A DNA stretch of 64,000 nt from Rebecca billardiae RCC1528 (GCA_965240325.2 OZ251222.1:4774001-4838000); one strand, 5' to 3'. Shown: positions 7,157 through 29,230, counted from the first letter of the stretch. Made by a program: numbers and translations. Notes: generated by a model from the sequence alone, not told the origin.

Positions 7157-8254
7157 CTATCTGTGGTCCGCGTTCATGATGTGCACGGGCACGCCCCTCT
7201 GCACCAGCGCGTACGGAGCGAACGTGCCGCCTGTGGGCGATGGCTCTGCCGCCTCAGCCGCGGTGGCGTGGTGCCGCTTCGGGATCTTGCGCTGCACCGG
7301 GCACTGCCCGCCCAGCGAGCAGAAGAGGACGGCGCGCCACAGCCGCTCCTGGTACTGCGCGGCCATATCGCCAGTGGGGCCCGTCCGCTCAAGCTGCACG
7401 AGCACGCGCTCGTACGCTGCGCGGCCGCGCGCGCGCAGCAGCTGGCTGCCGGCCGCAAACGTGCCGCCCATCTGCCACTTGCACGCGTGCAGCACGCGCG
7501 GCGGCACGCCCCAGTGCGCGCACGCCCACGCGATGAGCGAGGGCGGCGCGGCGTCGGCGAGCGGCACGCCGGGGCCCTGCCGGTTGCGCTGCAGCGCACA
7601 CTCGTGCTGCGCCTCGCACTCGCAGCGCGTGTCGCACGGCATGTACGGCCGCAGGCTGCAGCGGTACTCGGAGGCGCAGTACGCGCGCCGGTCGTCCTCG
7701 CAGCCGGCGGAGCTCGCCGTGAGGTTGGGCGCGATGGTGGCGGGCAGCAGCGCGTCCTTGATGCCGAAGATGCGGCGGCGAGCGCGCTGCATGAAGATGC
7801 CGTGCGCGTCCGTCCAGAACGTCGAGAGCGACGCCGTCCGCTGCGAGGCCAGCTCGGCGATGTCGTCGACCGCCCACTCGAGCACGCGCGCCGCGTACGT
7901 GCCGGCGCCCGTGTCCTTGTTGGTGATGGCGGCGTTGATGAAGAGCGTCAGGTCGGCGAGCGAGTCGTACCGCCGGATGATGTGCGTCAGGTGCGTGTGC
8001 GCCTCGCGCCCGTGGTTCGGGAGGCGCACGTTGCACACGGCGCGCTCCGCGCACTTGCAGTAGTACGTCGTGCGCACCTGCCCAAAGCCCTTCGCGCGGA
8101 GCGCCTGCTCCTTCGAGGCGATGGTCTCGAGGACCGCGTCGCTCTCGTCGCAGAGGGCCACCACCAGTTCGATCGACTGCCGGGTCACCGCCTGCTGCTG
8201 CCCGCTCGTCGCGAGCGGGACCAGAGCCAGCAGCAGCGCCCTGAGTGGCACCAT
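7157..8254 (-). CDS. Secreted DUF3431-family protein
   Basis: Signal peptide MVPLRALLLALVPLA, family motif LPNHGREAHTHLTHIIRRYDSLADLTLF, and ERLW near the C-terminus. Confidence 0.75.
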   Translation of the reverse strand: MVPLRALLLALVPLATSGQQQAVTRQSIELVVALCDESDAVLETIASKEQALRAKGFGQVRTTYYCKCAERAVCNVRLPNHGREAHTHLTHIIRRYDSLADLTLFINAAITNKDTGAGTYAARVLEWAVDDIAELASQRTASLSTFWTDAHGIFMQRARRRIFGIKDALLPATIAPNLTASSAGCEDDRRAYCASEYRCSLRPYMPCDTRCECEAQHECALQRNRQGPGVPLADAAPPSLIAWACAHWGVPPRVLHACKWQMGGTFAAGSQLLRARGRAAYERVLVQLERTGPTGDMAAQYQERLWRAVLFCSLGGQCPVQRKIPKRHHATAAEAAEPSPTGGTFAPYALVQRGVPVHIMNADHR

Positions 8255-9413
8255 CGTGACTCGTGTGCGCAGCGAGAAGGGCAAACCCGCCGCACTGGCA
8301 AGGGTCTGCGCTGCCGGCCCGGCACCTCGCCGAGAAGGCCGCGGGCGTCGCGTTTCGCTCGGGGCTCGGAGGCCAGCGCGAGTCGGTGGGGGGACCGACC
8401 GATACGGGGCACGCGTCGGGCGGGCAGGCCGGGCGCATCGGCATTCTGAACTGCCCGCCGATCGTCTCGCTCCGCCGCTTCTACTCGTAGCGCTCACGAG
8501 CTCGCTCATTGCGCACGGGAGGTCGGGCCCAGCCAGGCGCGCGCATGGCTTCCACGTGCGGGGCCGGGCATGTACGCGCGCGCGCGCGCGCCGAAGCCGT
8601 TCGGCCAGAGAGCCAGTTTCTTGCCCAAGCCGAGTGTACACGTGAAAACAGAACGGTGCCGGGCCGCCAGTGCGCCGTCTGCAGCTCGCGGGCTCACAGA
8701 GGCCTGCACGTTTCACACTGGCCCACGGGCACGGCTCGAGCGTGTCGCGTGAGAGAAGACGCGATGAGCTCATCCGCGGGTGGGTTAGCAGGCTGAGGCA
8801 TGCGCTTCAATTGCCCAATGGCATGCGTTCGGGACCGTGCTCAACCGAGTCAACGCAGTGGCGGCCGTGGTTGTCCCACCCGGCCACCCAACACATGCTG
8901 CAGGCTGCTGCTGGTCTGCTGGTATCTTCAGGCCGAACCCCTCGGTAGGCGGTAGTGCTACAGTTTACTAAGAATAAGAGACGCACACAGCCCAGGCAGG
9001 CGAGATAATGACACTGCCGCTTGTGTGTGGTGGGTAGGGGCCGGTAAAATTCTTTTGAAACCGAGCGTTCGGCGACGCCAATTCACTGGATCAATGTATC
9101 GCAATCCCACCAACAATTCCCCCCTCCCGCGGCTCCGCAGATATCAGAGAGCAGGCCTGTGTGTGACGTCGAAAAAGCTGCTATGATCTGCGCAGGAGCT
9201 GCGGTAGTCGGGTAGGATCTCCAATAAATCATTGCGCAGTAACTTAGCTCCGATCTCGCGAGAGATCGTGGATTCCTTACTGTATAATTGGATCACACTC
9301 CGTGACTTTGCAAACGCGACCTGCACACAAGCAGCCAACCTGGACCACCCAACCACATCGGCCCCGGCCAAATCGCGCACGCGCAGTGAACCAGCCTGAT
9401 CGTCGACGGCGAG

Positions 9414-12400
9414 ATGGGCTTCCTCAGCACCAGCCGGGATCCGCAGGCGCTCCTCCCGAACGGCGTGGACAAGGCGACCGTCCTCGACTCGAGCCCCACC
9501 AGCCGTACCATCGTCGCCTGCTGCATCTGCTTCTACGTGATTGCCGTCGCGACGGCGTTCCTCACGCTCGGCGACTCGACCGAGCACCTCCTCCCGGCCG
9601 AGCAGTACGCCGCGCAGTGCGCGGGCACTGTGCTCGCCGCGTCTGTCGTTCTGCGCACTATCCACCTCCACTTCCAGCGCGGCTCGAAGACGACCACCGC
9701 CGACATCGCCATGCTCGCGACGAACGCGATCGCTGCGTCGTCCAACCTGCTGATGGGCACGATCCCCACGCCGATCATCGTCGACAAGGTCACCGGCACG
9801 AGCGAGTACATGATCCGCTGGTGCGAGTGGACGACACTTGCCTTCTTGATGACGTTCATCGTCGAGGGCCTCACGGCCACCTCCCTGGGCGAGGCCCTCT
9901 CGCTCGCGCTGCTGATGGGCGTGAGCGCGGGCTGCGGCCTCGTCTTCCCGTTCTGCGAGGGCGTGTGGGCGTGGGGCTTCGTGATGACCGTCTCCTTTGT
10001 GACGTACTTTGCTCTCTTCCCGCGCTACGCGCGCCGCCGCCGGCTGTACCACGAGGCGGTCGCCTCGTGCATGAGCGCGAGCGACGTCTCGCGCGTCGTC
10101 GCGACCAAGGTGAGCTACTACCTGATGACGTGCTGCACTGTCATGTGGACGCTCATCACGCTCGACTACTGCGTGACGTGGGCGGCAGCGCTCTACCAGG
10201 GGGCAGGCTATGGCCGCGGGCAGACGCGCCCGCAGTGGCCGTTCATCCTCGACTGCGTGCTCGACGTCACCGCCAAGCTACTGTGCGTGCGGGCAGCACG
10301 CGTCCGCGCGAGCTACTGCGCACGCGCGCGCGGGCCATCTGGCAAAGCGCAACGAGCGCGCTCACCCGCCGACCACCCCTGCGGCCCCTGCGATGCCCGC
10401 GCGCCTCGTGATGCCATGCAGGTACGCGCACATCATCTCGACGGGCCACGCGCACGTGCCGCGCGAGGCGGAGCGGCAGCAGGCGCGCTGGATCCGGGAG
10501 GCCATGGACATGGTCTGGTCGGGCTCCCAGGACACGATCGTGCTCTCCGAGCTCCAGGGCGAGGGCACCGCGCGCTCCCTAGCCTCGACCGGCCTGGCGA
10601 AGCTCATCGGCGAAGAGAACGCGCAGAAGTGGTCGTCGTGGCGCACGCAGAGCGTCGTCGTGCAGGCCAACCCCACCGTCGCCCGCCGCCGCTCCCGCAG
10701 CAGCTCGCTCAAGCTGTCCTCCGCCGAGCTCGCGCCGCGGACGCCGTCCATTGACGGCTCGTCTTCCGGCGACGACTCGTCGAACTCGTCCTCTTCCAAC
10801 TCGAGCTCCCCGTGGCGCGAGAGGCGGCAGATCCGGGACATGAAGGTGCACGGCCAGCTCTCCTTCATGCATGCCGCGGTGCACCCGCTCGTTCACTCGC
10901 TCAACCTCGTGGCCTCCAGCCCCTCGGACTCCGGCCGCGCGACCGCCTCCAACCCCACGGACGCGTGCGCTTCCTTTGAGAACCTCATCTCCGAGGCGTG
11001 GGCGTCGTCCTCGCGCGCGGAGGGCCAGACGTGCTCGCTGACGTGGTGCGCGCACTTTGACGACGGCTCGGCCGGCGGGCAGGAGAAGCACTGCGAGATC
11101 CAGGTCACCCAGTGCGAGCGCGAGCTGCACGTCGAGATGCCGCGCGGCTCGCCGCCGATGCGCGAGCGCTTCCTGATCCTCGTCATACGCGACGTGACCG
11201 AGCGCACACGCACGGCCGATCTCGAGAAGCAGCTCATGAACGAGATCGCGGACAAGACGGTGCTCGCCGAGCGCATCGGGCGGAAGAAGGACGAGGAGGC
11301 CAACCGCTTCTCGCGCCACGAGGTGAAGAACTGCGTGCTCGCCGCGATGGCGCAGTGCGAGGCGCTCGTCGAGTGGCACACCAAGACCGCCGAGTCGTTC
11401 GCAGCGGGCGTCGACACGCAGCCGCTGCGCGCGGGGCTCGAGGACCTCAGCTCCAAGCTGCAGCGCACGCTCAACACGGTGCTCGCCGCGGCGATGGCGA
11501 AGGACCTCGCGAACGGCGAGTACAGCCCGAAGCCCGAGTTCACCAAGGTCGAGACGCTGCTGCGCGACAACCTCGCCTCGTGCGGCCGATTCCAGCTGAG
11601 CCTCTCGCCGCGCGCGCTGCCGTCGGTGCTGCTAGACCCGCAGCTGCTCTTCTGCGTGCACCGCAACGCCATCTCGAACGCGGTCAAGTACGGCTGCGCG
11701 ACGAGCCCGATCGAGACCGTCGTCGAGGTCAAGGCGGGCACGCTCACGCTGCGCGTCGTCAACATGCCCGGGCCGAACCACGACAAGCTGCTCGGCGCGC
11801 AGGGCGCGGGCGAGCGCGTGTTTGAGCGTGGGCTGCGGCTGCACGACGTCGACGAGGAGCAGGAGGCGCGCGCGCTGCACACCGAGCGCGTCTCGGCGGG
11901 CGACGGCGGCTGGATCATGCGCCGCTGCGCGCTCGCGCTCGGCGGCGAGTGCACGATCGCGTTCGAGCCGGACAAGACCGTCTTCGAGCTCTCGTGCCCG
12001 GTGCGTACGCGCGAGGAGTACGACGCGACCAAGGCGACGGTCGGGTTTGAGCTGCCGCCCTCGACCGTCTGCATCGGCATCGACGACTCCAAGGTGCAGC
12101 GCACCATCCTCAAGAAGATCTTCTCCGCGGTGGGCGCGAAGCCGGAGCAGACGAGCATCTACGGCGAGTGCGACGAGCATATCGTCAACCTCCCCGCGCT
12201 GCTCGTGCAGGCCGTGCGCGCGCACCCGAGCCAGCGCGTCTTTGTGATCGGCGACGAGAACCTCGACCTGACCGAGGGCTGCGCGTGCACCACCGTCTCG
12301 TGCACGCAGGCGTTCGCGCAGCTCGGCGAGCTGCTGAGCGAGGAGGAGCGGGCGCGCGTGCTGCTCGTAATCCGCTCGGCGAACGACTCGAAGGCCGACG

Positions 12401-12879
12401 TCGACTGCTACCTCGAGCACGCGCACGGCGTGCTGCCCAAGCGCGGCTTCGCCAAGCAGGCGACCATCGACGCCATCGCGCCGATGTGGCACACGCGCTT
12501 CGCGCCGAGCACGCCGAGCGGGCACTCGCGCCTGCAGTCGCCGAAGGGCGCTTTGACGCGGCCCGCGACGATGCGCGCCAGCACGGCCAGCGGCGGCGGC
12601 ATCACGAACGAGATCCGCTGCGAGGTGAGCAGCACGGTCAGCAAGCTGATCCGCGAGCTGAGCTCGCGCTCGGCGCCGTGGTCGCAGGTGCGGCGCAGCC
12701 TCATCACCATCAAGGGCGAGCTGGCGAGCCTCAACGCCGTGTGCTGCACGGACGAGGAGCGGCTCACGGACGCGATGCGCTGCATCCAGGGGCTGCTCGA
12801 GCACGAGGACGAGCCGCCAGCATTCCGCACGCAGTGGCCCACGCTGCTCGGCGCCATCAACCGCGCGCTCGCCGTGTGA
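9414..12879 (+). CDS. Microbial rhodopsin–PAS–histidine kinase–receiver fusion (exons 9414-10282, 10422-12879)
   Basis: Eight hydrophobic segments. Helix C is RWCEW (9816-9830) and helix G is LDVTAKLLY, completed across intron 10283-10421. PAS end ILVIRDVTER, H-box FSRHEVKN, N-box NAISNAVKYG, G-box SAGDGGW. Receiver IDDS...GDENLD...SAND...LPK. Confidence 0.85.
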
Positions 12880-13377
12880 GTCGTCGTGCGGCAGCAGCGC
12901 TCGCGGCCGCTCCGCCTCCCCAGCACGCCGCCTACATCAGTCGTAAGCCGCATGATGCACCTACCCTGCCGCCCGCCCACAGTCCGTACACCGACACGTA
13001 TAACACTCCGACTGATGCTGGCGACGATGCATGATCGACGACGCGATGACGATACGGATATGCGCGCGCATGATCGATGCATGACTACGAATATGCATGA
13101 TCGATATGTCAGATGCTATACGACGATGACGTACTGCTGCTATACCGTTATAGCTACTCTGACTCTGTCGTGTATAACGTCATCGACATCGCATACGACG
13201 ACGCTACAGCAGCATCAACCTGCCTTACAGACCTGGCGAGTCTGCTACATCTGACTGCTGCTATTATTACGCGCGATACTATAGCCCCTCATCGCGTATA
13301 GCCTGCTTGCTTATTCAGCACCGTCATCATGTTATATCGTCATCAGTCTCAGCGGCAGTCATCGTCGCGTCGTATCG

Positions 13378-16300
13378 TCAGCCGCGGAAGAGGAATCTGA
13401 CGGCGTCGAGGCCCGCGCGCCACGCGCCGCCCACGCCGTCGCCCGCCGTCCCCGCCCACGTCTCGACGCGCAGCCCAAGCTCGATCGCGTGTGGCACGAA
13501 CTGCGCGAGCGCGAGCGCGAGCGGCTCGTGCAGCACAAACGTGGTGGTGAGCGCGCCCGCCCACGACGAGAGCATCGCCTCCGTCTTGGCGCGGCCGAAG
13601 AGGCGGCCGTACACGATCGAGAGCGCGCACGTGCACGCAAAGAGGAGCAGCATGGCCGCCCACGCGAGCGCGGAGCGCGCGGCGGGCGGCGGGCCCGCGC
13701 GGCGGCACCGGCGCACCGCGCTGCGCCGCCGCGCCTCCGCGAGCCGCCGGCGCGCGTACCACACCGTCAGCTCGACCTCGTCCAACCGGAGGTCGCCGTT
13801 CAGGTCGATCTCGCGCACGAGATTGCGCCGCTCGTGCTCGGCGAGCGGGTCGCCCAGCTCGGCCATCAGCACGCCGATGCCGGCGACGCCGATCGTGCCG
13901 TCGCCGTCCGTGTCGAAGCGGACGAACGCGTCGCGCAGCGCGAGCACCTCGCGCCTGGTCAGCCCGGCGCGCGCCGCCTCGGCCAGCGCGACGAGGGTGG
14001 CCGCGCGCCGCATGGACGGCTCTGACGCGCGCCGCTCGCGCGCCGCGGCCGCCGCCTGCTGCCAGTGCTCGAGCGCGGAGTGTGCGAGGGGCGCGGCGTC
14101 GCGCGAGGCTGCGGCGGGGGCGCGGGCGAGCGCCGCGTCGAGGGCCGGGCCCGTCATCGCCGGCTCCGCCACCTCCTCCTCCTCCTCCTCCGCAGCCGCC
14201 GCGTCCGCCGCCGCGGCTGGCGTCGGCGCGTGGTTGGTGTCGGCGCGCGGCGCATGCGGCGGCGCCTCAGAGCGCGGAGCGGTCGCGGCGCGGCCTGCCG
14301 CCTCCGCCGCCGGCGCGGGCGCTTGCGCCGGCGCGGCCGCCTGCGCCTGCGCCTCCGCGCCCTCGTCGTCGGCGTCGTCGGCATCCGCCAGCCTGGGCGA
14401 CGCGCGCAGCCTTGTGCCCGCGTGCGGCCAGGGGACCGAGGCTCCCGCAGGCGCCGCACCCGCCAACGAAGCACGTGGCGGCGCGCCCGGCGCGCCCGCG
14501 GGCGTGTGCGCCGGAGCGGGCGGCGGCGGCGCGCGCGGCGGCGAGGGCGGCGGCGAGGGGTCGGGCGGGTGCGTGCCGATGGGCCGGATCCGCGCGCCCG
14601 CGCCGCTGCCGAGCCCCACAGGTGCGGCGGGGCGGCGCGCGCCGCTTCGCGCGCCGCCGCTGCCGCCGCTGCCGACACTGCTGCCGCAGGAAGGCGGCCG
14701 GTCGGCGGCGGGCGCGGCCGTGCCCGCGTCCGCGGCGCGGTCAAAGGCGGCGGCGCGCGCTGCGAGCGTGCGCGAGCGCTCGAGCGAGAGCGCGCCCACC
14801 TCCATCCGCGAGAGCGAGCCCGCCGGCGCCGCAGCCTCCGCGCCCCCCTCCGCTTGCGCGCGCGCGTGCAGCCGCGCGGCCTCGCGCGGCCCGCCGCGCG
14901 CGTCCGCGCGCGCGCCGCTCTGCAGAGGCGCGACGATGCCGCGCCCGCTCGTCGGCACGTTGGGCACGTGCACGCGCGAGCCGGCGGAGGCGGGGCGCGC
15001 GAGGACCCACGCGGCCGGGGCGGCCTCGTCGCCCTCCGCCTCCGCCTCGCTCGGCAGCGGCGCGCGCGTGCCCACGAGCCGCCGTGCGGCGGGCGCGTGC
15101 GGCTGCGCGCGCAGCGGCGTCACGCTCGTGCCGCGCGGCGCGCCGCGCGGCGGCGGCGGCCCGGCGCGCCGCGCGCCCCCGCCGCGCGCCGCGCCCCTAC
15201 TCGCAAAGCGCGATCCGAGCATCAGCATGTCCGCCGCGCGCTCGCGCTCGGCCGCCGCCGACGAGCGCGCGCCGCGCTGCGTGCGGCCAGCCGCCGCGTC
15301 GGCGTCGGCGTCGGCGTGCTCGGCACCGACGGGCGTGCCCGGCTCCGAGCCCACGACCACGCCCTCGTACTCCTGCGCCGCGCCCAGCACCGCCGCGTAC
15401 CCGTACCCGCGTGCGCCGCGCCCGCCGCCCGTCCGAGCGCGCGCCCCAAAGTGCGCGCGCGCCGAGAGCCGCTGCACGGCCGCAAAGAGGCGGACGGCGG
15501 GCGTGGGGCGCTTCGGGTCGTCCGCGGCGCCGAAGCGCCAGAGCGCGCGGAAGAGCGCGAGGGCGGGGCCGGCGATCGCGCCGACGAGCAGCGCGTACAG
15601 CAGCACGGTCACCAGACCCACCGGAGCCGCTGCTTGGTCGTCCGGCCGCGCGCCCGCGCCGCCCTGCAGCGCGCCCTCGGAGAGCCGCGCGCCGCCGTCG
15701 GCGCCGTCGCGGTAGAGCATGCACTCGAGCGCGAGCTGGAGCGCGAGCGTGTTGAAGAGCGTCTGCACGAGCTCGGCGCGGCGCAGCGCGCGCTCGGGCG
15801 GGGTGAGCAGCAGCGCGAGCAGCGTGTGCGCGCGCACGATCGCGTCCGCCGCCCTGCGCGCGCCGCGCCGCAGCCGGCGCGCGCTCGAGCGCTCGGCGCG
15901 CGCCGCGAGGTGCAGCGTCGCGAGCCGGCGGCGCGCCTGGCGCTGCAGCACGACGGCCGCGACGTGCCTGCGCACCTCGGCGTCGCTGAGCCGCGCGGAG
16001 GGGCCGCGCATGCCGAAGCGCTCGAGGTGCTTCGCCGTCGTCGGCGTGGGCGGCGGCAGCGACACGGGCGTGCGCGCGCCGCTGCTGCGGCTACGAGCGC
16101 CGGGCGCGCGCCCGCCCCGCCGCGCGCCGCCGTCGGAGACGGCGAGGCCGCCGCCGTCCGCGCCCGCGCGCGCGTCGGCGTCGGCGGCTGAGGCGCGGTC
16201 GCTCGGCACGGAGACGAAGAGGGGCGGCGGCGGCGAGGGCGGCGGCGAGGGCGGCCCGGCCGCGCGCGGCGCGGCGCGATCGGCGGCCGCCGCGGCCGCG

Positions 16301-17405
16301 GCCGCCGCCTCGCGCGCGCGCCTCTTGCCGCGCACGACCTCGAGAGTGCTCGGGCCTGCGCCGCCGCACGCGCCGCCGGGGCGGACGACGACGATGCCGC
16401 CGGCGGCGGCGCCGGGCGTCGGGCCGCCGCCGCCGAAGCTGCAGCTCACGCGCTCGGCAGCGCCGCCGCGCGCGCCGCCGGCCGAGAGCGCCCCGCGCGG
16501 CGCGGACACGGAGCGCCGAGGGTCGGCGGCGGCGCGCGGCGGCGCGCGCTGCGCCGCGGCGGCCGAGGCGGCCGAGGGCGCGCGCCGCGCCGGGCTACGC
16601 CCGCGGCTGGCGCCGAGCGGCGAGCCGCCGCCAGCCGCGCCCCCGCCCGCGCGCCACACCGCCCCGCTCCCGCCCGAGCCCGCGCTCCGCCTCTGCACGC
16701 CCGCCCCGGCGTACGTGCGCAGCTCGTCCTCGTGCCACCGCGCGTACGTGCGGAGCGCGCGCGCGTCCGCCCAGAGGGCGAGGAGCAGGCACAGCGCGTT
16801 CGCGCCCGCGAGGAGGTAGACGAGGCGGTAGATCGCGGGGTTCTCGCGCCAGCCCTGCGCCGGCGTCGCGAGCACCGCGCGCGCGTCGTCCGCGCTGAAC
16901 GTGTTCACGCGCACGGCCTCCGCCTGCGCGCCCGCCTCGGCGTCGGAGGCGGGGAGCGCGACTGCCGCAAAGTCGGTGAGGTGCGTGCACGCGCAGTAGA
17001 GCAGCGAGGGCTCGGGGCCGGCCACCGCCTCGCAGCCGCTGGTGACCCACGCGCCGCCGCCCGCGGCCGAGGCGTCGTACCAGTGGCACGCGGCGCGGCG
17101 CGTGCACGCGCGGCCATTCCACGGCGGCGCGCACTCGCACACAGCGCCGCGCGCGCCGCCCTCCGGAGCGGGCGCGCACGCGCCGCGGCCGTGGCACCAG
17201 CCGAGCTGCGCGCAGTCGGCGCTGCCGTTGCCGGGCGCGCCCCAGCCCGCCGTCGGCGCGTCGGCCCGGAGCGGCAGCTGCAGCACGACAGGCGTGTGCA
17301 GCCCGCTGAGCGACAGCGCCGCGCCGCCCGCCGAGTAGAGCGTCACTGAGAGCACGGCCGAGGCGAGGGCGGCCACGCCGAGCGAGGACGTGTCCACGCG
17401 CTCGG

Positions 17406-17440
<35 letters not shown>

Positions 17441-20400
17441 TCCGCGCCGCCGTCGGCCCACGCGGAGGACGCGTTGGCGCTGGCGTGCACGTTGCGCCTC
17501 AGCGCGTACACGACAGCGTCCACGCCGCCGCCCAGCAGCGCCGCAGGCACGCCGTCGAGCGCGCTCGGCGGCAGCAGCGCGCCCGCCACCGCCGTGCCGT
17601 TGGCGCGCACCGCGGCCGCGCTCAGCCGCGCCGCGCTCACGTTGACGGCCGCGCCGACCGCCTCGGTCGGCGCCTCGCCCTGCACCGCGCCCGCGAGGAG
17701 CGCGCGCGCCAGCGCCGCGGTCGCCTTGCTCGCACTCGAGCCGAGCGCCGCCGCGGCCGCTGGCGCCAGCCCCGCCGCGTCCGGCGCGAGCGCGGCGTCG
17801 AGCGAGGCGAAGAGCGCCGCGGCCGTATGGCCGGCCACGCCCGTCTCCGCCGACGCGGCCGCGAGCTCGGCGAGCTGCCCGAGCGCGGAGGCCTGCGAGT
17901 CGGCGTCGAGGTCGCGCGCGGGCGCCGCGCGCAGCACGCTCTGCAGCACTGTCGCCGCCTGCGCGCGCGCGTCCGCCGTGCGCGGAGCGAGCCGCGCCGC
18001 GTGCGCTGAGACGGCGAGCAGCTCGCGCACGGCGCCGCGCGCGTCCACGCCCGCGGCCGCGCCGCCGGGCGCGCGCAGGCCGCCCGCGAGCGCGTCGGCG
18101 AGCTGCGCGGCCTCCGCGCCCGCGCCGCGCGCGAGCGCCTCCCTCGCGCGCGCCAGGCCCGCGCCAACCTCCGCCGCGCCCAGCCCGGCCGGCGGCGCGC
18201 GCGCCTCGCAGCGCGCGTACGCGGCAGCCGCGCCGCCGAGCGAGTCACGCACGGTCACGCGCACCGTGCGGTTGCCCGCGGGCAGCACGGCAAAGTCGAA
18301 GGGCGCGGCGCGCGGCGCGCCGAGCGGCGTGAACTCGAGCGCCTCGAGCGCCTCCCCGGCGGCCGCCGCGCCGCCGCCCGCCTCCGCCACCGCCTCCGCC
18401 TGCGCCTCAGCGTGCGCCTCCGCCTGCGCAAACGCGTAGCTGAGCGGCAGGTCCTCCGGGTCGTCGTCGGTCCAGCCGCCGCCCGCGGCCAGCGCGTACC
18501 GCGTGCGCAGCGCCTCGCCCGAGGGCGGCTCGACGCGGAGTGCGCCGCCGTACGGCGGCCGGTTCACGCGGACGAGCAGCTGCGCGAACGCGGCCGCCGC
18601 GCCGGCCGCCGCGCCTCCGTCCTTGGCGCCGCCCGCCGCTTGCGTGACGGTGAGGGACAAGGCGTACGTCGCGCCCGGCGTGAGCGCGCCAGACCTGAAG
18701 GCGAGCGCGCGGCCCGAGCGGCCGGTCGTGGTGACGGCGGACGTGTCCGCGAGGTCGAGCCCCGCGGGCGCGAGCTCGAGCGCGCCCTCCTCCTCCGCCC
18801 CCGCGCCCTCCTCCGCGCCGAGCACGAGCTGCGCCTCCCAGCGAAACTGCCAGCGCACCGCGCCCGCGGCCTCGGCCGCCTCCGCCGCCTCGTCCAGCGC
18901 CGAGCCGATCGCCAGCCGCTGCGTGGGCAGCGCGAACACGGGGTTGGCCTTGCGCGCGCTCGGCGGGAGCAGCGTGAGCGTGGGCACCGCGCGCCCCACC
19001 GTCTCCACCTCCACCGCCGCGCGCGCGGGCGCGAGGCCAGGCTTGGCCACGCGCACCGAGAATGTAAACGTGCCGGGCGGCAGTGCGCCCGCGCGCAGCG
19101 TCAGCACCGGCGCGCTCGCGTTGGCCCCGGCCGCGCCGAGGTCGAGCGGCGCGCCGTCCGCGCCGAGCGCGCGCGCCTCCCACGCGAACGTCAGGCCCGG
19201 CTGCGCGCCGCCGCCACCGCCCTCCTGGCCCGCGCCCTGCGGCGGCGGCGGCGCGTTGGGATCGACAGAGCCGCGCGCGTCAAGCTGCAGCGCGCTGCCC
19301 GCGCTCACGACGCGGCGGCTGCCGTCGCCGCCGCCGCCGAGGAGCGCCGCGCGCAACGGCTGGCGCTCGACGACGAGCACGACGCTCGCCTCGCCCGCCG
19401 CGCCCGGCTCGGCCTCCATCGCGCCGCGCACGCGCAGCTCATACGACACACCGGCAGCCATGCTGAACGGCGGCAGTGAGAGGGTCGGGCCGAGCGCGGC
19501 GCCGAGCGCGGCGCCGAGCGCGCCGCCCGCCGCGCTGAGCGGCGCGCCGGTGTCCGTCTCCCACGCGCGAACGAGCTCCCAGCCGAAGCGCACGCGCGCG
19601 CCCTCGGCGCCCTCGGGCCAGCACGCCGCCAGCGCCGCGCTCGCCTCGAGCGTCGTCTCCGCGTCCGCGCGCACGCGCCTCGTCGCTGGCCCTTCCACCG
19701 CCACCGCGGGCGCGGCCGCGTCCGAGCGGCGCACGCGCCAGCGCGCGCGCGCAGAGGCCGTGCCGAGGAACGAGCGCACCACGAGGGAGAAGTCGAGCGC
19801 GCCCGGCGGCAGCTGCGACAGCTCGAGCACGGCCGTGTGCGGCGGCAGCGCGCGCAGCGCCTCGTTGAGCGCGCGCGCACCGCCCGACGCGCCCGGCTCG
19901 ACACGCCACGTAAACTCGAGCGGCACGACGCCGCCGCCCGCCGAGGCCGAGCCGTCGAGGCGCAGCGTCTCGGCCGGGCAGCCCGAGAGCACGCTCGGCC
20001 CGGAGAGCGCGGCGACGGGCGTGGGGCAGCGCGCCTCGCGCCCGCACGGCGCGTCCGCGTGCACGGCCGCGCCGCCGCTCGCCCAGAGCGCGCCCGGCGC
20101 CGACTCGCACGGCGCCGGGTCGAGCGCGCACGCCGCCGGCCGCACCGCGCGCTCGCGCAGCGCGACGGCCGAGCCCGGCCGCGCGGCGGTGCCGGCGCCC
20201 AGCTGCGCGACGAGGGTGCGCTCGTCGCGCCAAAAGCACGCCGGCGGCTCCGTCGACGCGCCCTGCAGCACGGCGGCCACGCTTCGATCGTCGAGGAAGC
20301 GAGCGCACGGCAGCAGCTCAGCGCCGCGCGCGCCGCCGCGGTCGGTGGGCTGCGCGTCGAAGCGCAGCTCGAGCGTGCCCAGCGCCGCGCCAAACACGGC

Positions 20401-23400
20401 GGAGGCCACGCGCGGCGCGCGCACGCCCTCGTACTCGAAGAGCGCGCGCGGCGCGGCCGGAGGCGCGCCGTGCTCGGGCGCGAACTGCTGGCCGTTCAGC
20501 GACACTCGGACCGGCACCGCGCCCGCAGCGCCCGGCGGCGACGTCACGAGCACGGCCCCCGCGCTCGCGTGCGCGGGCGCGCCGTCCGCGAGCGCGTCGC
20601 CAAAGGCCACGCGCAGCAGGCCGCCCAGCCCGGCGGCGTGCAGTGCGCTCAGCCCCTCGCCGAGCACCGCCACCGACGTGCCGCCCGCCGCGGGGCCCGC
20701 CGCCGGCGAGACCGCCGTCACGTTGGGCTCGTCGTAATAGAAGAAGGGCGCGCCGGACGCGCTGGCGCTGCCGGCCGCGCCGCCGCCGAGCGAGAGCTCG
20801 AGCGCGGACGCGCCCGGCTGCGCGCGCGGCGGCGTGGCGCACTCCGCGCGCGACTCGCCGCCCGGCCCGGGCGGCAGCAGCCGCGCCGGCGCCGCGCAGC
20901 CGGGCGCGCCCGCGAGCACGCAGCACAGCAGCCCGGGCCCGTACTCGGCAAAGCCCGCGCCCACCACCGTCACGCGCGTGCCGCCGCGCACGGGGCCGGC
21001 GGGGGGCTCGAGCCGATGCACGGCGAGGGCCGAGGCGTTGTACAGCTCGAAGGTCGGAGGCCCGTCGAGCGCGGGCACAGCCAGCGCGCCGCCGCGCAGA
21101 CGCACGGCCACGGCGTACGCGCCTGCAGGGAGCGTGCGCGGGAGCGCGCACGCGAGCGCCTCGGCGGAGGCGAGCACGCCCGGCGTGACGGTGAGGGCGG
21201 GCGCGCCGCCGGGCGGGGGCGCTCCGAGCGCCGAGAGCACGCACTGCGCGCCGCCCTCGCGCGCGTCAAAGCCGAAGCCGTGCGCGGTGAGCGTGGGCGC
21301 GTGCGCGCCGCCCGCGGGCGCGCCGCGCGGCGAGACGGCGGCGAGGGAGGCCTGGATGGCAGGCGGCGGCGGCGAGGGCGGGGTGGGCGGCGGCGGCGGG
21401 CTCGGCGGCGGGCTCGGCGGCGGCGGCGGCGGCGGCGGCGGCGGGCTCGGCGGCGGGCTCGGCGGCGAGGGCGGCGGCAAGGGCTCCGTGCGAGGCGGCG
21501 GCGGTGGGGACGGCGGCGGGCTCGGCGGCGGCGGGCTCGGCGGCGGGCTCGGCGGCAGTGACGGCGGCGGGCTCGGCGGCGGCGAGGGCGGCGGGCTCGG
21601 CGGCGGCGAGGGCGGCGGCGAGGGCGGCGGCGAGGGCGGCGGCGGGCGCGGTGGCGGCGACGGCGGCGGGCTCGGCGGCGGGCTCGGCGGTGGCGACGGT
21701 GGCGGGCTGGGCGGCGGGCTGGGCGGCGGGCTCGGCGGCGGCGGGCTCGGCGGCGGGCTCGGCGGCGGCGAGGGCGGCGGCGAGGGCGGAGGGCTCGGCG
21801 GCGGCGAGGGGGGTGGCGAGGGCGGCGGGCTCGGCGGCGGGCTCGGCGGCGGCAAGGGCGGCGGGCTCGGCGGCGGTGATGGCGGTGGGCTCGGCGGTGG
21901 GCTTGGCGGTGGGCTCGGCGGCGGCGAGGGCGGCGGCGAGGGCGGCGGGCTCGGCGGTGGGCTCGGCGGCGGGCTTGGCGGCGGGGAGGGCGGCGGCGAG
22001 GGCGGCGGGCTCGGCGGTGGGCTTGGCGGCGGAGCCGGGGGCGGCGACGGCGGCGGCGACGGCGGAGGCAAGGGCGGCGGTGAGGGCGGTGGCGAGGGCG
22101 GGGGGCTCGGCGGTGGCGAGGGCGGCGGGCTCGGCGGTGGTGGGCTGGGCGGCGGCGAGGGCGGCGGGCTCGGCGGCGGCGAGGGCGGCGGCGAAGGCGG
22201 TGGGCTCGGAGGCGGGCGTGGCGGTGGTGACGGCGGTGGCGGGCTCGGCGGTGGCGACGGTGGTGGGCTCGGTGGTGGGCTCGGTGGTGGGCTCGGTGGT
22301 GGCGAGGGCGGCGGGCTCGGCGGCGGGCTCGGCGGCGGTGGGCTTGGTGGTGGGCTCGGCGGCGGGCTCGGCGGTGGCAAGGGCGGCGGGCTCGGCGGTG
22401 GGGATGGCGGCGGGCTCGGTGGCGGCGACGGCGGCGGCGGGCTCGGCGGAGGCGATGGTGGCGGGCTCGGCGGTGGGCCTGGCGGCGGCGATGGTGGCGG
22501 GCGTGGTGGCGGCGACGGCGGTGGGCTCGGTGGCGGGCTAGGCGGCGGGCTCGGCGGCGGCGAGGGCGGCGGGCTCGGTGGCGGGCTCGGAGGCGGGCTC
22601 GGAGGCGGGCTCGGCGGCGGCGAGGGTGGCGGCGACGGTGGCGGCAAGGGCGGAGGCGAGGGCGGTGGCGATGGTGGTGGCGGACTAGGTGGCGGGGATG
22701 GTGGAGGGCTTGGGGGCGGCGAGGGCGGCGGCGGGCTCGGCGGAGGCGATGGCGGCGGGCTGGGTGGTGGGCCTGGCGGCGGCGACGGTGGCGGGCTCGG
22801 CGGCGGCGAGGGGGGCGGCGAGGGCGGCGGCGATGGTGGCGGAGCAGGCGGCGGCGAGGGCGGTGGCGAGGGTGGTGGGCCCGGCGGCGGGCTTGGCGGC
22901 GGGCTCGGTGGCGGGCTCGGTGGCGGGCTCGGTGGCGGCGAGGGGGGCGGCGACGGAGGCGGCGGACTGGGAGGCGGGCTCGGCGGTGGTGACGGTGGAG
23001 GGCTTGGCGGTGGTGAGGGCGGCGGCGGGCTTGGCGGCGGCGACGGCGGCGGGCTCGGCGGCGGCGACGGCGGCGGCGACGGCGGCGGCGACGGTGGCGG
23101 GCTCGGCGGCGGTGATGGTGGCGGGCTCGGTGGCGGGCTCGGTGGCGGCGAGGGCGGCGGCGATGGTGGCGGCGGGCTCGGTGGCGGGCTCGGCGGTGGC
23201 GACGGTGGAGGGCTTGGCGGTGGTGAGGGCGGCGGCGGACTTGGCGGCGGGCTCGGTGGCGGGCTCGGCGGCGGCGACGGCGGCGGCGACGGTGGCGGCG
23301 GGCTCGGTGGCGGGCTCGGCGGTGGCGACGGTGGAGGGCTTGGCGGTGGTGAGGGCGGCGGCGGGCTCGGCGGCGGTGACGGTGGCGGGCTCGGCGGCGG

Positions 23401-28791: not shown

Positions 28792-29230
28792 GCGCGACGA
28801 TCCGTCGACGCGCCTGCCCACAGCAGCAAGCTTTGGTGTCCCCATTCGGTTTGCACACTTCATCTATTTTTAACTTACCCTGAGCTCGAGTTCCCAGCCC
28901 ATATTCGCTAAATAGGACGATGTTGGTGCGCGACTACGGCGCGAAGCGTGGTTTATTCGTATGTGGTTTAACGACTGGGTATGTATGCAACGGCGGGAAC
29001 GAATATGCCGATTTACTTTCATACGGATTGACGGGCAGAAAGATTCCACAAGAGAGGAAAAACTCAAAAAGAGTCCGCACGCGCACGGCTCGGCAGTGCG
29101 CGCCCCGAGTCGCCGAGCGGGTTGGAGGCGTCGTTCCCGTCTGAATAAACGAGACGAGTCGGTCCAGACCATGCTGCGCTGTGTCCAGACCGCGTCTCTA
29201 GCGCCATCCCGGACGCCGAGCCCCCCGCTC

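What the first reader, a model, noticed from the sequence alone, without database searches (positions are those of the whole stretch)
9414..12879. 8-TM microbial rhodopsin fused to a PAS–His kinase–receiver phosphorelay: candidate new light-sensing two-component system
Seen in sequence: after removing intron 10283-10421, the N-terminal ~300 aa has eight hydrophobic helices. Helix C is RWCEW (aligning to bacteriorhodopsin R82-Y83-A84-D85-W86) and helix G is LDVTAK (D212/K216, with the retinal Lys at 10275-10277). A PAS C-terminus, phospho-His box RHEVKN, HATPase and an intact receiver follow. Established: enzyme rhodopsins (HKR, Rh-GC, Rh-PDE) carry an extra TM0, and green-algal HKRs usually end in a guanylyl cyclase. 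Inference: this protein has a PAS domain, an HxxKN-type H-box and no cyclase, so it looks like a distinct light-regulated kinase architecture in a chromalveolate alga. The intron splits helix G from the kinase, so ORF-level annotation would miss the fusion.
Basis: partly seen in the sequence, partly recalled or inferred. Interest (0 to 1): 0.9.

Follow-up and report, generated by a model that had tools for sequence, protein, structure and literature searches.

The report
Hidden rhodopsin-histidine kinase light sensor
A two-exon gene of a very GC-rich haptophyte alga encodes an eight-helix retinal-type light sensor fused to a bacterial-style histidine kinase and receiver, and it belongs to a large family in haptophytes and diatoms that standard domain searches do not recognise as rhodopsins.

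Summary
Removing a GT..AG intron (10283-10421) joins 9414-10282 to 10422-12879 into one 1108-aa protein. Transcript-derived homologues run straight across the join.

- **Downstream modules.** These are a PAS-like module (weak evidence), a conserved His-Glu H-box, a histidine-kinase ATPase domain (hhalign 98%) and a receiver with all catalytic residues (hhalign E 8.8e-5). A phosphotransfer-like tail follows, with Ile at the histidine position in this copy.
- **Family.** At least 292 clusters in haptophytes, diatoms and a dictyochophyte, named only as hypothetical proteins.
- **Novelty.** No paper in the searchable library describes it. Rhodopsin-kinase-receiver without a cyclase is already known in green algae, so this is a new variant of a known kind.
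- **Untested.** Retinal binding, light regulation and kinase activity.

This scan noted, and twice followed up, paralogues elsewhere in this genome.

The parts
9414..10282 (+). Exon 1: start codon to splice donor. Encodes residues 1-289 and two bases of codon 290 (TM0 to mid helix G).
   Evidence: ORF and sequence. An in-frame stop lies 8 codons upstream of the ATG. Spliced translation.
10283..10421 (+). Intron, 139 nt, GT..AG, inside helix G two residues after the Schiff-base lysine.
   Evidence: Sequence. Frame restoration and junction identity with continuous homologues. No RNA of this organism could be examined.
10422..12879 (+). Exon 2: rest of helix G, linker, PAS-like module, kinase core, receiver, tail and the stop codon TGA at 12877-12879.
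   Evidence: tblastn of the spliced protein back onto the window.
9498..9566 (+). TM0, the extra N-terminal helix (residues 29-51).
   Evidence: Mapped from the AlphaFold model of P0002 (helix 10-32) through alignment A1. Mean hydropathy 1.77. Aligned with TM0 of Rh-PDE.
9594..9761 (+). Helices A and B (residues 61-86 and 95-116).
9768..9809 (+). B-C beta-hairpin with the family-invariant Asp (IIVDKVTG).
   Evidence: Strands 100-104 and 111-113 in the model. D105 of P0002 is invariant. Aligned to LVDSTQG of Rh-PDE.
9810..9869 (+). Helix C with RWCEW at 9816-9830. Arg135 and Glu138 (9825-9827) sit at the bacteriorhodopsin R82 and D85 positions. Leu142 and Ile149 sit at the T89 and D96 positions.
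   Evidence: Profile alignment to RYAEW of Rh-PDE. Arg in 162/162 and Glu in 156/162 relatives. The correspondence to bacteriorhodopsin numbering is from established knowledge of the RYxDW motif.
9888..10199 (+). Helices D, E and F (residues 159-180, 184-217, 222-262). Helix F carries the nearly invariant Cys241 and Trp245.
   Evidence: C in 146 and W in 151 of the relatives that cover the column.
10236..10282 (+). First part of helix G, WPFILDCVLDVTAKL. Asp284 is at 10263-10265 and the putative Schiff-base Lys288 at 10275-10277.
   Evidence: Lys in 145/145 and Asp/Glu in 137/146 relatives. Aligned to DIVAK of ChRmine and DYAAK of Rh-PDE.
10422..10524 (+). Rest of helix G, running without a break into a long cytosolic linker helix.
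   Evidence: Single helix 255-304 in the model. The structural alignment to the Rh-PDE TM+linker crystal structure 7d7q covers model residues 3-315.
10474..11208 (+). PAS-like module, interrupted in this copy by a Ser-rich, probably disordered insert of about 120 aa. It ends in ILVIRDVTER.
   Evidence: Conserved flanks (VWxxSSDVI..S, SPxF, CExK, VVVRDISER) around a variable middle. ESM Atlas features of the same region of P0019 score 0.96 to PAS clusters. No Pfam PAS hit at E<=0.01; one weak PAS_9 hit, E 0.047, in 1 of 34 members.
11206..11560 (+). DHp-like helical hairpin with the H-box ANRFSRHEVKN. The putative phospho-His589 codon is at 11317-11319.
   Evidence: His, Glu and Asn are invariant in 33 full-length relatives. 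The position right after the PAS-like C-terminus is the usual one. hhalign gives only a 6-residue in-register match to HELRTP (E 0.24).
11575..12006 (+). Catalytic ATP-binding (CA, HATPase_c) domain. N box HRNAISNAVKYG, G2-like SAGDGGWIM. The G1 position reads VNMPG (Asn for Asp).
   Evidence: hhalign 98%, E 2e-13, against six E. coli kinase cores. Profile hits in the PDB are almost all sensor kinase CA domains. Pfam HATPase_c matches 33-34 of 35 relatives, and this copy scores below the cut-off at 17.5-19.8 bits.
12055..12492 (+). Receiver (REC) domain. Asp844/Asp845 (GIDDS), putative phospho-acceptor Asp901 (12253-12255), Ser942, Lys963.
   Evidence: hhalign against 10 E. coli receivers: 119 columns, E 8.8e-5, all five catalytic positions in register. 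ESM Atlas: 92 of 100 nearest named clusters are Response_reg. No Pfam hit.
12565..12876 (+). C-terminal helical tail, HPt-like in the family (W...W..LHxLKGDL). This copy reads SLITIKGEL, with Ile at 12703-12705 in place of the histidine.
   Evidence: Alignment A6: His present in 24 of 32 relatives. Weak Pfam Hpt in 7 and DUF7032 in 10 of 32. hhalign to E. coli HPt is in register but weak (E 0.026, probability 2%).

Best explanation
The locus is one intact two-exon gene for a 1108-aa membrane photoreceptor kinase.

Shown:
- An N-terminal eight-helix microbial-rhodopsin fold (TM0 plus helices A-G).
- The helix-C Arg/Glu and the helix-G Asp/Lys of a retinal Schiff-base site.
- Helix G continuing as one long helix into the cytosol.
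- Then a PAS-like module, a helical hairpin with a conserved His-Glu box, a histidine-kinase ATP-binding domain, a receiver with a complete phospho-acceptor pocket and a helical tail.

Inferred, by analogy with the characterised enzymerhodopsins Rh-PDE, HKR1 and 2c-Cyclop:
- Lys288 binds retinal.
- Photoisomerisation moves helix G and the dimeric linker helix.
- The PAS-like module passes this change to the DHp bundle, which raises or lowers autophosphorylation of His589.
- The phosphoryl group then goes to Asp901 of the receiver.
- In most family members the tail carries an HxxKG histidine that could complete a His-Asp-His relay within the chain. This copy has Ile there, so its receiver would either pass phosphate to a separate HPt protein or paralogue, or act as the terminal output or sink.

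The sign of light regulation, the colour sensitivity and the cellular output are unknown.
For: Gene model:
- GT..AG intron, a single ORF after splicing, GC3 0.96.
- Continuous transcript-derived homologues across the junction.

Rhodopsin domain:
- The profile of 56 relatives hits only rhodopsins in the PDB. Rh-PDE scores E 9e-7 including TM0 and RYAEW. ChRmine scores E 3e-3 over helices F-G including the Lys.
- AlphaFold model: pLDDT 93.5, pTM 0.88, eight helices and a B-C hairpin.
- The top 50 Foldseek PDB hits are all microbial rhodopsins.
- Lys 145/145, Arg 162/162, Glu 156/162, Asp/Glu 137/146.

Kinase and receiver:
- hhalign 98% for the CA domain.
- Invariant H-E..N in the H-box.
- REC hhalign E 8.8e-5 with DD, D, S and K aligned, against controls of 0.31 and 0.63.
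- Atlas features.

Expression of the fusion in relatives: MMETSP transcripts from Pavlova, Rebecca, Pseudopedinella, Corethron and Rhizosolenia.

Retinal use in haptophytes: functional channelrhodopsins of Phaeocystis (PMC8818676).
Against: - No experiment exists: retinal binding, a photocycle and kinase activity are all inferred.
- The structural model is of the closest full-length homologue (57-58% identical in this domain), because the spliced window protein could not be submitted.
- No RNA of this organism could be laid on the intron.
- Pfam recognises neither rhodopsin, PAS, HisKA nor REC.
- Homology of the H-box helix to HisKA is not significant.
- The G1 box has Asn where GHKL ATPases normally have the adenine-binding Asp, in the whole family. 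ATP use is therefore not assured.
- This copy lacks the tail histidine.
- A retinal-forming carotenoid oxygenase was not looked for successfully in this genome.
Confidence: 0.8

Rival explanations
1. The 8-TM domain has the rhodopsin fold but binds no retinal. On this reading it is a membrane sensor for some other signal (a lipid, an ion, voltage or a small molecule) that drives the kinase, like opsin-related proteins that have lost photoreception.
For: Pfam Bac_rhodopsin does not match. Identity to any solved rhodopsin is only 8-18%. Helix C lacks the usual Thr and the Pro at +9, and helix F lacks the Tyr-Pro of WxxYP. No pigment data exist.
Against: The Schiff-base Lys is present in every one of 145 relatives, and the Arg and both carboxylates are almost invariant. 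Retinal-free opsin relatives typically lose the Lys (established knowledge of fungal opsin-related proteins). The pocket tryptophans of helices C and F are conserved.
Confidence: 0.1
2. It is simply a fast-evolving member of the already characterised green-algal histidine kinase rhodopsin (HKR / 2c-Cyclop / Ot-HKR) clade. On this reading it was inherited or transferred from green algae, and nothing about the family is new except its hosts.
For: It has the same general order of parts (8-TM rhodopsin, kinase, receiver), and green-algal members without a cyclase exist (PMC7693036, PMC12558739). I could not obtain HKR sequences to build a joint tree.
Against: In AlphaFold DB clusters the family's own members score E 1e-15 to 1e-16. 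A protein named 'histidine kinase' scores 2.7e-4, no better than other rhodopsin-fold hits in the same list. By sequence profile the best solved relative is Rh-PDE. A PAS-like module lies between rhodopsin and H-box, whereas in Cr2c-Cyclop1 the phospho-His is residue 352, right after the opsin (PMC6284317). Both counterion carboxylates are kept, whereas Cop5 and Cop6 lack Asp85 (PMC7693036). Among named relatives no green alga appeared.
Confidence: 0.12
3. The kinase module is catalytically dead. On this reading it is a pseudokinase scaffold and the protein signals by another route, for example the receiver or tail binding partners in a light-dependent way without phosphotransfer.
For: The G1 box has Asn-x-Pro-Gly instead of Asp-x-Gly-x-Gly in all relatives. 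Pfam HATPase_c is below its cut-off for this copy. The H-box helix has no significant similarity to HisKA. The tail histidine is lost in this copy and in 7 other relatives.
Against: The H-box His-Glu-Asn, the N-box Asn residues, the G2-like GDG and all five receiver catalytic residues are invariant or nearly so across more than 30 divergent proteins. That pattern is what purifying selection on phosphotransfer predicts. One solved histidine kinase (9m08) also has Asn at the aligned G1 position.
Confidence: 0.12
4. The gene model is wrong: two genes, a small membrane protein ending near 10754 and a soluble kinase starting downstream.
For: Without splicing, exon 1 reads on to a stop at 10754, and an ATG-initiated ORF 10210-12879 exists. 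No RNA data were available for this organism.
Against: The unspliced continuation is Arg/Ala-rich and has no homologue. Helix G would be cut two residues after the Lys. More than 40 full-length relatives, several from transcriptomes, carry both halves in one chain with the same junction sequence.
Confidence: 0.03

Closest known systems
Rhodopsin phosphodiesterase (Rh-PDE) of Salpingoeca rosetta (PDB 7cj3, 7d7q)
   Different: About 13% identity. The output here is a PAS-like module plus a histidine kinase and receiver, not a phosphodiesterase. The hosts are haptophytes and ochrophytes, not choanoflagellates.
Green-algal histidine kinase rhodopsins: Chlamydomonas HKR1/Cop5, 2c-Cyclop (Cop6), and Ostreococcus Ot-HKR
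   Same: An 8-TM (type Ib) rhodopsin followed in one chain by a histidine kinase and a receiver. Some members have no cyclase (PMC6284317, PMC7693036, PMC12558739). This is the best functional analogy.
   Different: Not close in fold search. A PAS-like module is inserted before the H-box. The kinase and receiver are too divergent for Pfam HisKA or Response_reg. An HPt-like tail replaces the cyclase. Both counterion carboxylates are retained, whereas Cop5 and Cop6 lack Asp85 (PMC7693036). No joint tree was built.
Sensory rhodopsin II with transducer HtrII and CheA
   Different: There the kinase is a separate protein reached through a separate transducer. Here everything is one polypeptide, with an extra TM0.
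Bacterial PAS- or LOV-linked hybrid histidine kinases (PAS, then DHp, CA, REC, HPt, e.g. ArcB)
   Same: The order of cytosolic modules is the same, including a ...RD[IV][ST]ER... PAS C-terminus leading through a helix into the H-box. The CA and REC domains are recognisably homologous to those of E. coli hybrid kinases.
   Different: The sensor is a membrane rhodopsin, not a cytosolic cofactor-binding PAS. The G1 box has Asn for Asp. The HPt histidine is missing in this copy.

Membership tests
Microbial (type 1) rhodopsin | Seven-helix rhodopsin fold | tested here: met
Microbial (type 1) rhodopsin | Lysine in the middle of the last helix for the retinal Schiff base | tested here: met
   Lys288 (10275-10277). 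Present in 145/145 relatives. Aligned to the Lys of ChRmine and Rh-PDE.
Microbial (type 1) rhodopsin | Helix C Arg and carboxylate counterion (R82/D85 positions) and helix G Asp (D212 position) | tested here: met
   RWCEW and LDVTAK. Arg 162/162, Glu 156/162, Asp/Glu 137/146.
Microbial (type 1) rhodopsin | Match to the curated sequence model (Pfam PF01036 Bac_rhodopsin) | tested here: not met
   No hit at E<=1 for the window protein or for P0001/P0002. Membership rests on profile and structure.
Microbial (type 1) rhodopsin | Binds retinal and forms a pigment with a photocycle | not testable with these tools
   Needs expression with retinal and spectroscopy.
Enzymerhodopsin (type Ib, 8 TM) | Extra N-terminal helix TM0, so both termini are on the same (cytosolic) side | tested here: met
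   Helix 10-32 of the model, which maps to residues 29-51 here. It aligns with TM0 of Rh-PDE. Topology itself is inferred.
Enzymerhodopsin (type Ib, 8 TM) | Enzyme domain fused C-terminally through a helical linker continuous with helix G | tested here: met
   Single helix 255-304 in the model. Kinase core downstream.
Canonical green-algal HKR / 2c-Cyclop | Rhodopsin, histidine kinase and receiver in one chain | tested here: met
Canonical green-algal HKR / 2c-Cyclop | Guanylyl cyclase (active or degenerate) at the C-terminus | tested here: not met
   No cyclase in Pfam scans of 35 relatives. The tail is HPt-like. This feature is optional in green algae (PMC7693036).
Canonical green-algal HKR / 2c-Cyclop | Rhodopsin domain nests within the HKR clade in a tree | not tested
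   No HKR sequences could be obtained by reference. Indirect evidence is against it: the AlphaFold DB hit named 'histidine kinase' scores E 2.7e-4, against 1e-16 for family members.
Hybrid histidine kinase | CA domain with N and G2 boxes | tested here: met
   hhalign 98%, E 2e-13. PDB profile hits are to sensor kinases.
Hybrid histidine kinase | G1 box Asp-x-Gly-x-Gly | tested here: not met
   Reads Asn-Met-Pro-Gly. The Asn and Gly are invariant in the family.
Hybrid histidine kinase | DHp with a phospho-accepting His in an H-box | tested here: inconclusive
   The His-Glu..Asn motif is invariant and in the expected place. Profile similarity to HisKA is limited to 6 residues, E 0.24, and no Pfam HisKA family matches.
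Hybrid histidine kinase | Receiver with DD, phospho-Asp, Ser/Thr and Lys | tested here: met
   hhalign E 8.8e-5 over 119 columns with all five positions in register. Atlas features.
HPt domain | Phosphorylatable His in HxxKG on a four-helix bundle | tested here: not met
   This copy has Ile (12703-12705). 24 of 32 relatives have His. Fold evidence is weak.
PAS domain | PAS fold recognisable by profile or structure | tested here: inconclusive
   No significant Pfam PAS hit (one PAS_9 at E 0.047 in 1 of 34 members). ESM Atlas features score 0.96 to PAS clusters for a homologue. The pattern of conserved strands is PAS-like.

The most novel reading that the evidence does not exclude
This family arose independently of green-algal HKRs, as a separate fusion of an Rh-PDE-like 8-TM rhodopsin with a PAS-kinase-receiver-HPt relay. 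On this reading it is a major unrecognised visible-light sensor of diatoms, coccolithophores and other red-lineage phytoplankton. Surveys that look for rhodopsins through Pfam models would then have missed it systematically. One example is the open-ocean metatranscriptome study that reported no rhodopsin-histidine kinase transcripts (PMC8017926).
Probability: 0.35. Interest if true: 0.85.

Novelty: new variant of a known kind. Interest (0 to 1): 0.74.

Why it matters
Diatoms and haptophytes carry out a large share of ocean photosynthesis. Their known light sensors are mainly flavin-based blue-light receptors, phytochromes, and pump or channel rhodopsins.

A multi-gene family of rhodopsin-controlled histidine kinases would add a retinal-based signalling input to two-component relays in these lineages. 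It would also explain why such receptors were reported as absent from ocean transcript surveys, and it would supply a profile for finding them.

For protein science, the family offers a self-contained His-Asp(-His) relay driven by a rhodopsin. It has an unusual ATP-lid (Asn in G1) and a PAS-like coupler, and it is a possible optogenetic kinase scaffold.

For annotation, intron-split and Pfam-invisible domains hide a whole receptor class behind the label 'hypothetical protein'.

Tried and rejected
- **Pfam on both halves:** only a sub-threshold HATPase_c hit.
- **phmmer of the TM half against PDB sequences:** chance hits only.
- **AlphaFold without an alignment:** pLDDT 42.7, unusable.
- **ESM Atlas features for the TM domain:** scores of 0.80 or less, to unrelated bacterial membrane sensor domains. 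Rejected as uninformative.
- **The search for homologous proteins:** all three searches returned only 2-4 proteins, because the word index saturated. The taxon range therefore had to be pieced together from cluster look-ups.
- **The look-up of sequencing runs:** none was listed for RNA or for any kind, so read laying was never used and the splice could not be checked with reads.
- **Profiles of the receiver and the tail against PDB sequences:** nothing significant.
- **hhalign of the tail to four E. coli HPt domains:** in register but probability 2%.
- **hhalign of the H-box helix to E. coli DHp:** six residues only.
- **HisKA_2/HWE assignment of the H-box:** considered and rejected, because the residue after His is Glu, not Arg, and no such Pfam model matched even at E<=10.
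- **Second copy in the window:** none.
- **Note on a retinal-forming oxygenase in this genome:** none found.
Full report
**Gene model**

The + strand holds an ORF from the ATG at 9414, with an in-frame stop 8 codons upstream, and a second long ORF ending at the TGA at 12877-12879. The stretch 10283-10421 (139 nt) starts GT and ends AG. Removing it shifts the frame by +1 and yields one 1108-aa protein with no internal stop. Third-position GC of the spliced CDS is 0.96, against 0.50 at second positions, as expected for a real gene in a 73% GC genome.

The junction reads ...LDVTAKLL|YAHIISTGHAHVPRE.... The two best full-length relatives read straight through the same place: P0002 has DVAAKLIYAHVIACAH and P0001 has IMLKLVYAHIVAGLH. 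P0002 is a transcriptome protein of Pavlova gyrans, MMETSP1466, so the fusion is transcribed as one message in a relative.

No public sequencing run was listed for this stretch. Splicing in this organism is therefore inferred, not seen. Only one copy lies in the window.

**Is the N-terminal domain a rhodopsin?**

Direct tools say nothing. There is no Pfam hit at E<=1, no PDB sequence hit, and a single-sequence AlphaFold model is unusable.

An exhaustive HMMER search with residues 1-289 found 292 clusters at E<=1e-3, of which 192 are at E<=1e-10. A 56-sequence alignment (A1) changed the picture.
- Used as a profile against PDB sequences it returned 12 hits, all rhodopsins.
- The best was Salpingoeca Rh-PDE (E 9e-7). 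That alignment runs from TM0 through the B-C loop motif (ptpVlvDpvtG against LVDSTQG) and helix C (RWcEW against RYAEW).
- ChRmine followed (E 3e-3), aligned over helices F-G, including FDViaKllY against CDIVAKSCY.

With A1 as its alignment, AlphaFold modelled P0002:1-320 at pLDDT 93.5 and pTM 0.88. P0002 is 57-58% identical to the window protein in this domain. It was used because the spliced window protein cannot be passed by reference. The model has eight helices, a beta-hairpin between helices B and C, and a 50-residue helix that continues helix G into the cytosol.
- The top 50 Foldseek PDB matches are all microbial rhodopsins, led by Rh-PDE.
- The ESM Atlas shape search puts a bacteriorhodopsin cluster first.

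**Retinal site**

All 168 fetched relatives were aligned to the family HMM.
- The helix-G lysine is present in 145 of the 145 sequences that cover the column.
- The helix-C arginine is present in 162 of 162, and the glutamate three residues later in 156 of 162.
- The following tryptophan is present in 150.
- The helix-G Asp/Glu four residues before the lysine is present in 137 of 146.
- A helix-F Cys...Trp pair is present in about 150.

In the window protein these residues are Arg135, Glu138 (9825-9827), Trp139, Asp284 (10263-10265) and Lys288 (10275-10277). By the established RYxDW / DxxxK correspondence, they sit at bacteriorhodopsin positions R82, D85, W86, D212 and K216. Positions T89 and D96 are Leu and Ile, so there is no proton donor, as in sensory rather than pumping rhodopsins. 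A lysine that is never lost across such divergence argues against a retinal-free membrane sensor, but pigment formation is untested.

**Cytosolic modules**

Thirty-five full-length relatives were aligned (A2) and cut into parts.
- *PAS-like module (10474-11208).* Conserved flanks (VWxxSSDVIxxS, SPxF, CExK, VVVRDISER) surround a variable middle, which in this copy is a Ser-rich insert of about 120 aa. Pfam gives no significant PAS hit; one member has a PAS_9 hit at E 0.047. Language-model features of the same region in P0019 point to PAS clusters at 0.96. I treat PAS as likely but not shown.
- *H-box.* ANRFSRHEVKN follows at once. In 33 full-length proteins the His, Glu and Asn are invariant. 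The dyad is His-Glu, as in HisKA (HELRTP). Homology of this helix to E. coli DHp domains is not significant (six residues in register, E 0.24), and no Pfam HisKA family matches.
- *ATP-binding domain.* This is secure. hhalign gives 98%, E 2e-13, against six E. coli kinase cores, with the N box (HRNAISNAVKYG) and a G2-like box (GDGGWIM) aligned. PDB profile hits are almost all sensor kinases. One oddity stands out: the G1 box reads V-N-M-P-G, with Asn and Gly invariant in the family, where GHKL ATPases normally have Asp-x-Gly-x-Gly. One solved kinase (9m08) also shows Asn at the aligned position. Whether ATP is bound normally is open.
- *Receiver (12055-12492).* Pfam misses it. hhalign against ten E. 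coli receivers aligns 119 columns at E 8.8e-5, with IDDS, the Asp of GDENLD (Asp901, 12253-12255), the Ser of RSAND and the Lys of LPK in register with CheY D12/D13, D57, T87 and K109. Cross-controls scored 0.31 and 0.63. Ninety-two of the 100 nearest named ESM Atlas clusters are Response_reg.
- *Tail (12565-12876).* In most relatives it carries W...W..LHxLKGDL, the HxxKG signature of HPt domains. Pfam gives weak Hpt hits in 7 and DUF7032 hits in 10 of 32 tails. P0002 adds a second, Pfam-significant Hpt. In this copy the histidine is Ile (12703-12705), and 7 other relatives also lack it.

**Family and hosts**

Named members come from these groups:
- Pavlovophyceae: Pavlova gyrans, Rebecca sp., Pavlovales sp. 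CCMP2436 and Diacronema lutheri.
- A coccolithophore: Chrysotila.
- Diatoms: Cylindrotheca, Cyclostephanos, Corethron and Rhizosolenia.
- A dictyochophyte: Pseudopedinella.

AlphaFold DB adds two unnamed family clusters at E 1e-15 to 1e-16. Every source name is 'hypothetical' or 'uncharacterized'. The D. lutheri entry KAG8461603.1 has 651 aa, where the full-length relatives assembled here have roughly 870-1460.

A quick ML tree of 113 rhodopsin domains places the window gene with P. gyrans inside a five-member clade (SH-aLRT 98) whose two named members, P. gyrans and Rebecca, are both Pavlovales. That clade lies within a 40-row group that also holds the Chrysotila and Pseudopedinella sequences. 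It stands apart from a 73-row group that contains all labelled diatoms.

The window's 73.1% GC equals that reported for D. lutheri, 73.25% (PMC8379373). The organism is therefore probably that species or a close relative; this is an inference.

**Comparison with what is known**

The class is known. Enzymerhodopsins have eight helices with TM0 and comprise HKRs, RhoGCs and RhoPDEs (PMC6284317, PMC12558739). Green-algal modular rhodopsins coupled to HisK and RR, only some with a cyclase, are described (PMC7693036). So 'no cyclase' is not new in itself.

This family differs in several respects:
- Its hosts.
- A rhodopsin domain that is no closer to the AlphaFold DB entry named 'histidine kinase' (E 2.7e-4) than to other rhodopsin folds, and closest by profile to Rh-PDE.
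- The PAS-like module before the H-box. In Cr2c-Cyclop1 the phospho-His is residue 352, directly after the opsin (PMC6284317).
- Retention of both counterion carboxylates, which Cop5 and Cop6 lack (PMC7693036).
- A kinase and receiver too divergent for Pfam.
- An HPt-like end.

Seven full-text searches found no paper describing a rhodopsin-kinase in haptophytes or diatoms.
- A survey of eukaryotic histidine kinases that required Pfam domains found three in Emiliania and did not describe these proteins (PMC6324907).
- An open-ocean survey reported no rhodopsin-histidine kinase transcripts (PMC8017926).
- A 2026 network of about 40,000 rhodopsins has 17 uncharacterised clusters, which may or may not include this family (PMC13739731).

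Subscription literature was not searchable. I could not obtain HKR sequences for a joint tree, so independence from green-algal HKRs is likely but unproven.

**Mechanism**

Shown: the domain order, the conserved catalytic and chromophore-site residues, and the continuous helix from helix G into the cytosol.

Inferred by analogy with Rh-PDE, HKR1 and 2c-Cyclop: retinal on Lys288 isomerises, helix G and the linker move, and the PAS-like/DHp bundle changes autophosphorylation of His589. The phosphate then passes to Asp901. In this copy the relay cannot continue to the tail, because the tail has no histidine. The phosphate must therefore go to another HPt protein or paralogue, or stop at the receiver.

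**Earlier notes of this scan**

The scan had already flagged many paralogues in this genome. Two were followed up with the same reading, and a note on this window points out the E-L-I helix-C motif. I reached the conclusions above from my own tests. Those notes are not independent evidence.

**Verdict**

This is a real, intact gene and a confirmed rhodopsin-fold/kinase/receiver fusion. It is a new variant of a known kind. Its photochemistry and kinase chemistry remain to be tested.

Noticed in passing
window 13378-28863 (- strand): One giant ORF of 5161 aa, convergent with the rhodopsin-kinase gene. It has an LRR-like N-terminus, about 2,000 residues of near-perfect (S/P)PPPSPPP repeats, and a long Ala/Gly-rich C-terminal part with an EF-hand-like stretch.
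   Followed up: no
window 11755-11775 (VVNMPGP) and the same column in alignments A2/A5: The G1 box of the kinase ATP-binding domain has Asn where GHKL ATPases have the adenine-contacting Asp. The Asn and the following Gly are invariant in the whole family. The solved kinase 9m08 also shows Asn at the aligned position. This could mean altered nucleotide binding.
   Followed up: partly
P0026 (Diacronema lutheri KAG8461603.1, 651 aa): A family member in the published D. lutheri annotation is a 651-aa 'hypothetical protein', where the full-length relatives assembled here have roughly 870-1460 aa. The deposited gene model is probably truncated, as an intron-split gene like this one would be.
   Followed up: no
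P0002 (Pavlova gyrans) residues 922-1013 and 1101-1175: The closest full-length homologue keeps the tail histidine and carries a second, Pfam-significant Hpt domain after it. Paralogues and orthologues therefore differ in how far the phosphorelay runs within the chain.
   Followed up: partly
alignment A6 (family tails): Pfam DUF7032 matches the HPt-like tail in 10 of 32 relatives (best E 8.6e-7). That domain of unknown function may therefore be an HPt-related four-helix bundle.
   Followed up: no
window 12900-13380: The short region between the two convergent genes is visibly less GC-rich than the rest. It contains several copies of short motifs such as GCATGATCGA and ATGATCGAT. This may be shared 3' UTR or terminator sequence.
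   Followed up: no
literature (PMC8818676): A rhodopsin sequence from Pavlova (Diacronema) lutheri was reported as non-electrogenic in a channelrhodopsin screen (Klapoetke et al. 2014, as cited there). I did not establish whether that sequence belongs to this family.
   Followed up: no
window 7157-8773 (- strand): An upstream 538-aa ORF with an Arg/Pro-rich N-terminus and a Cys-rich C-terminal half. Its function was not examined.
   Followed up: no
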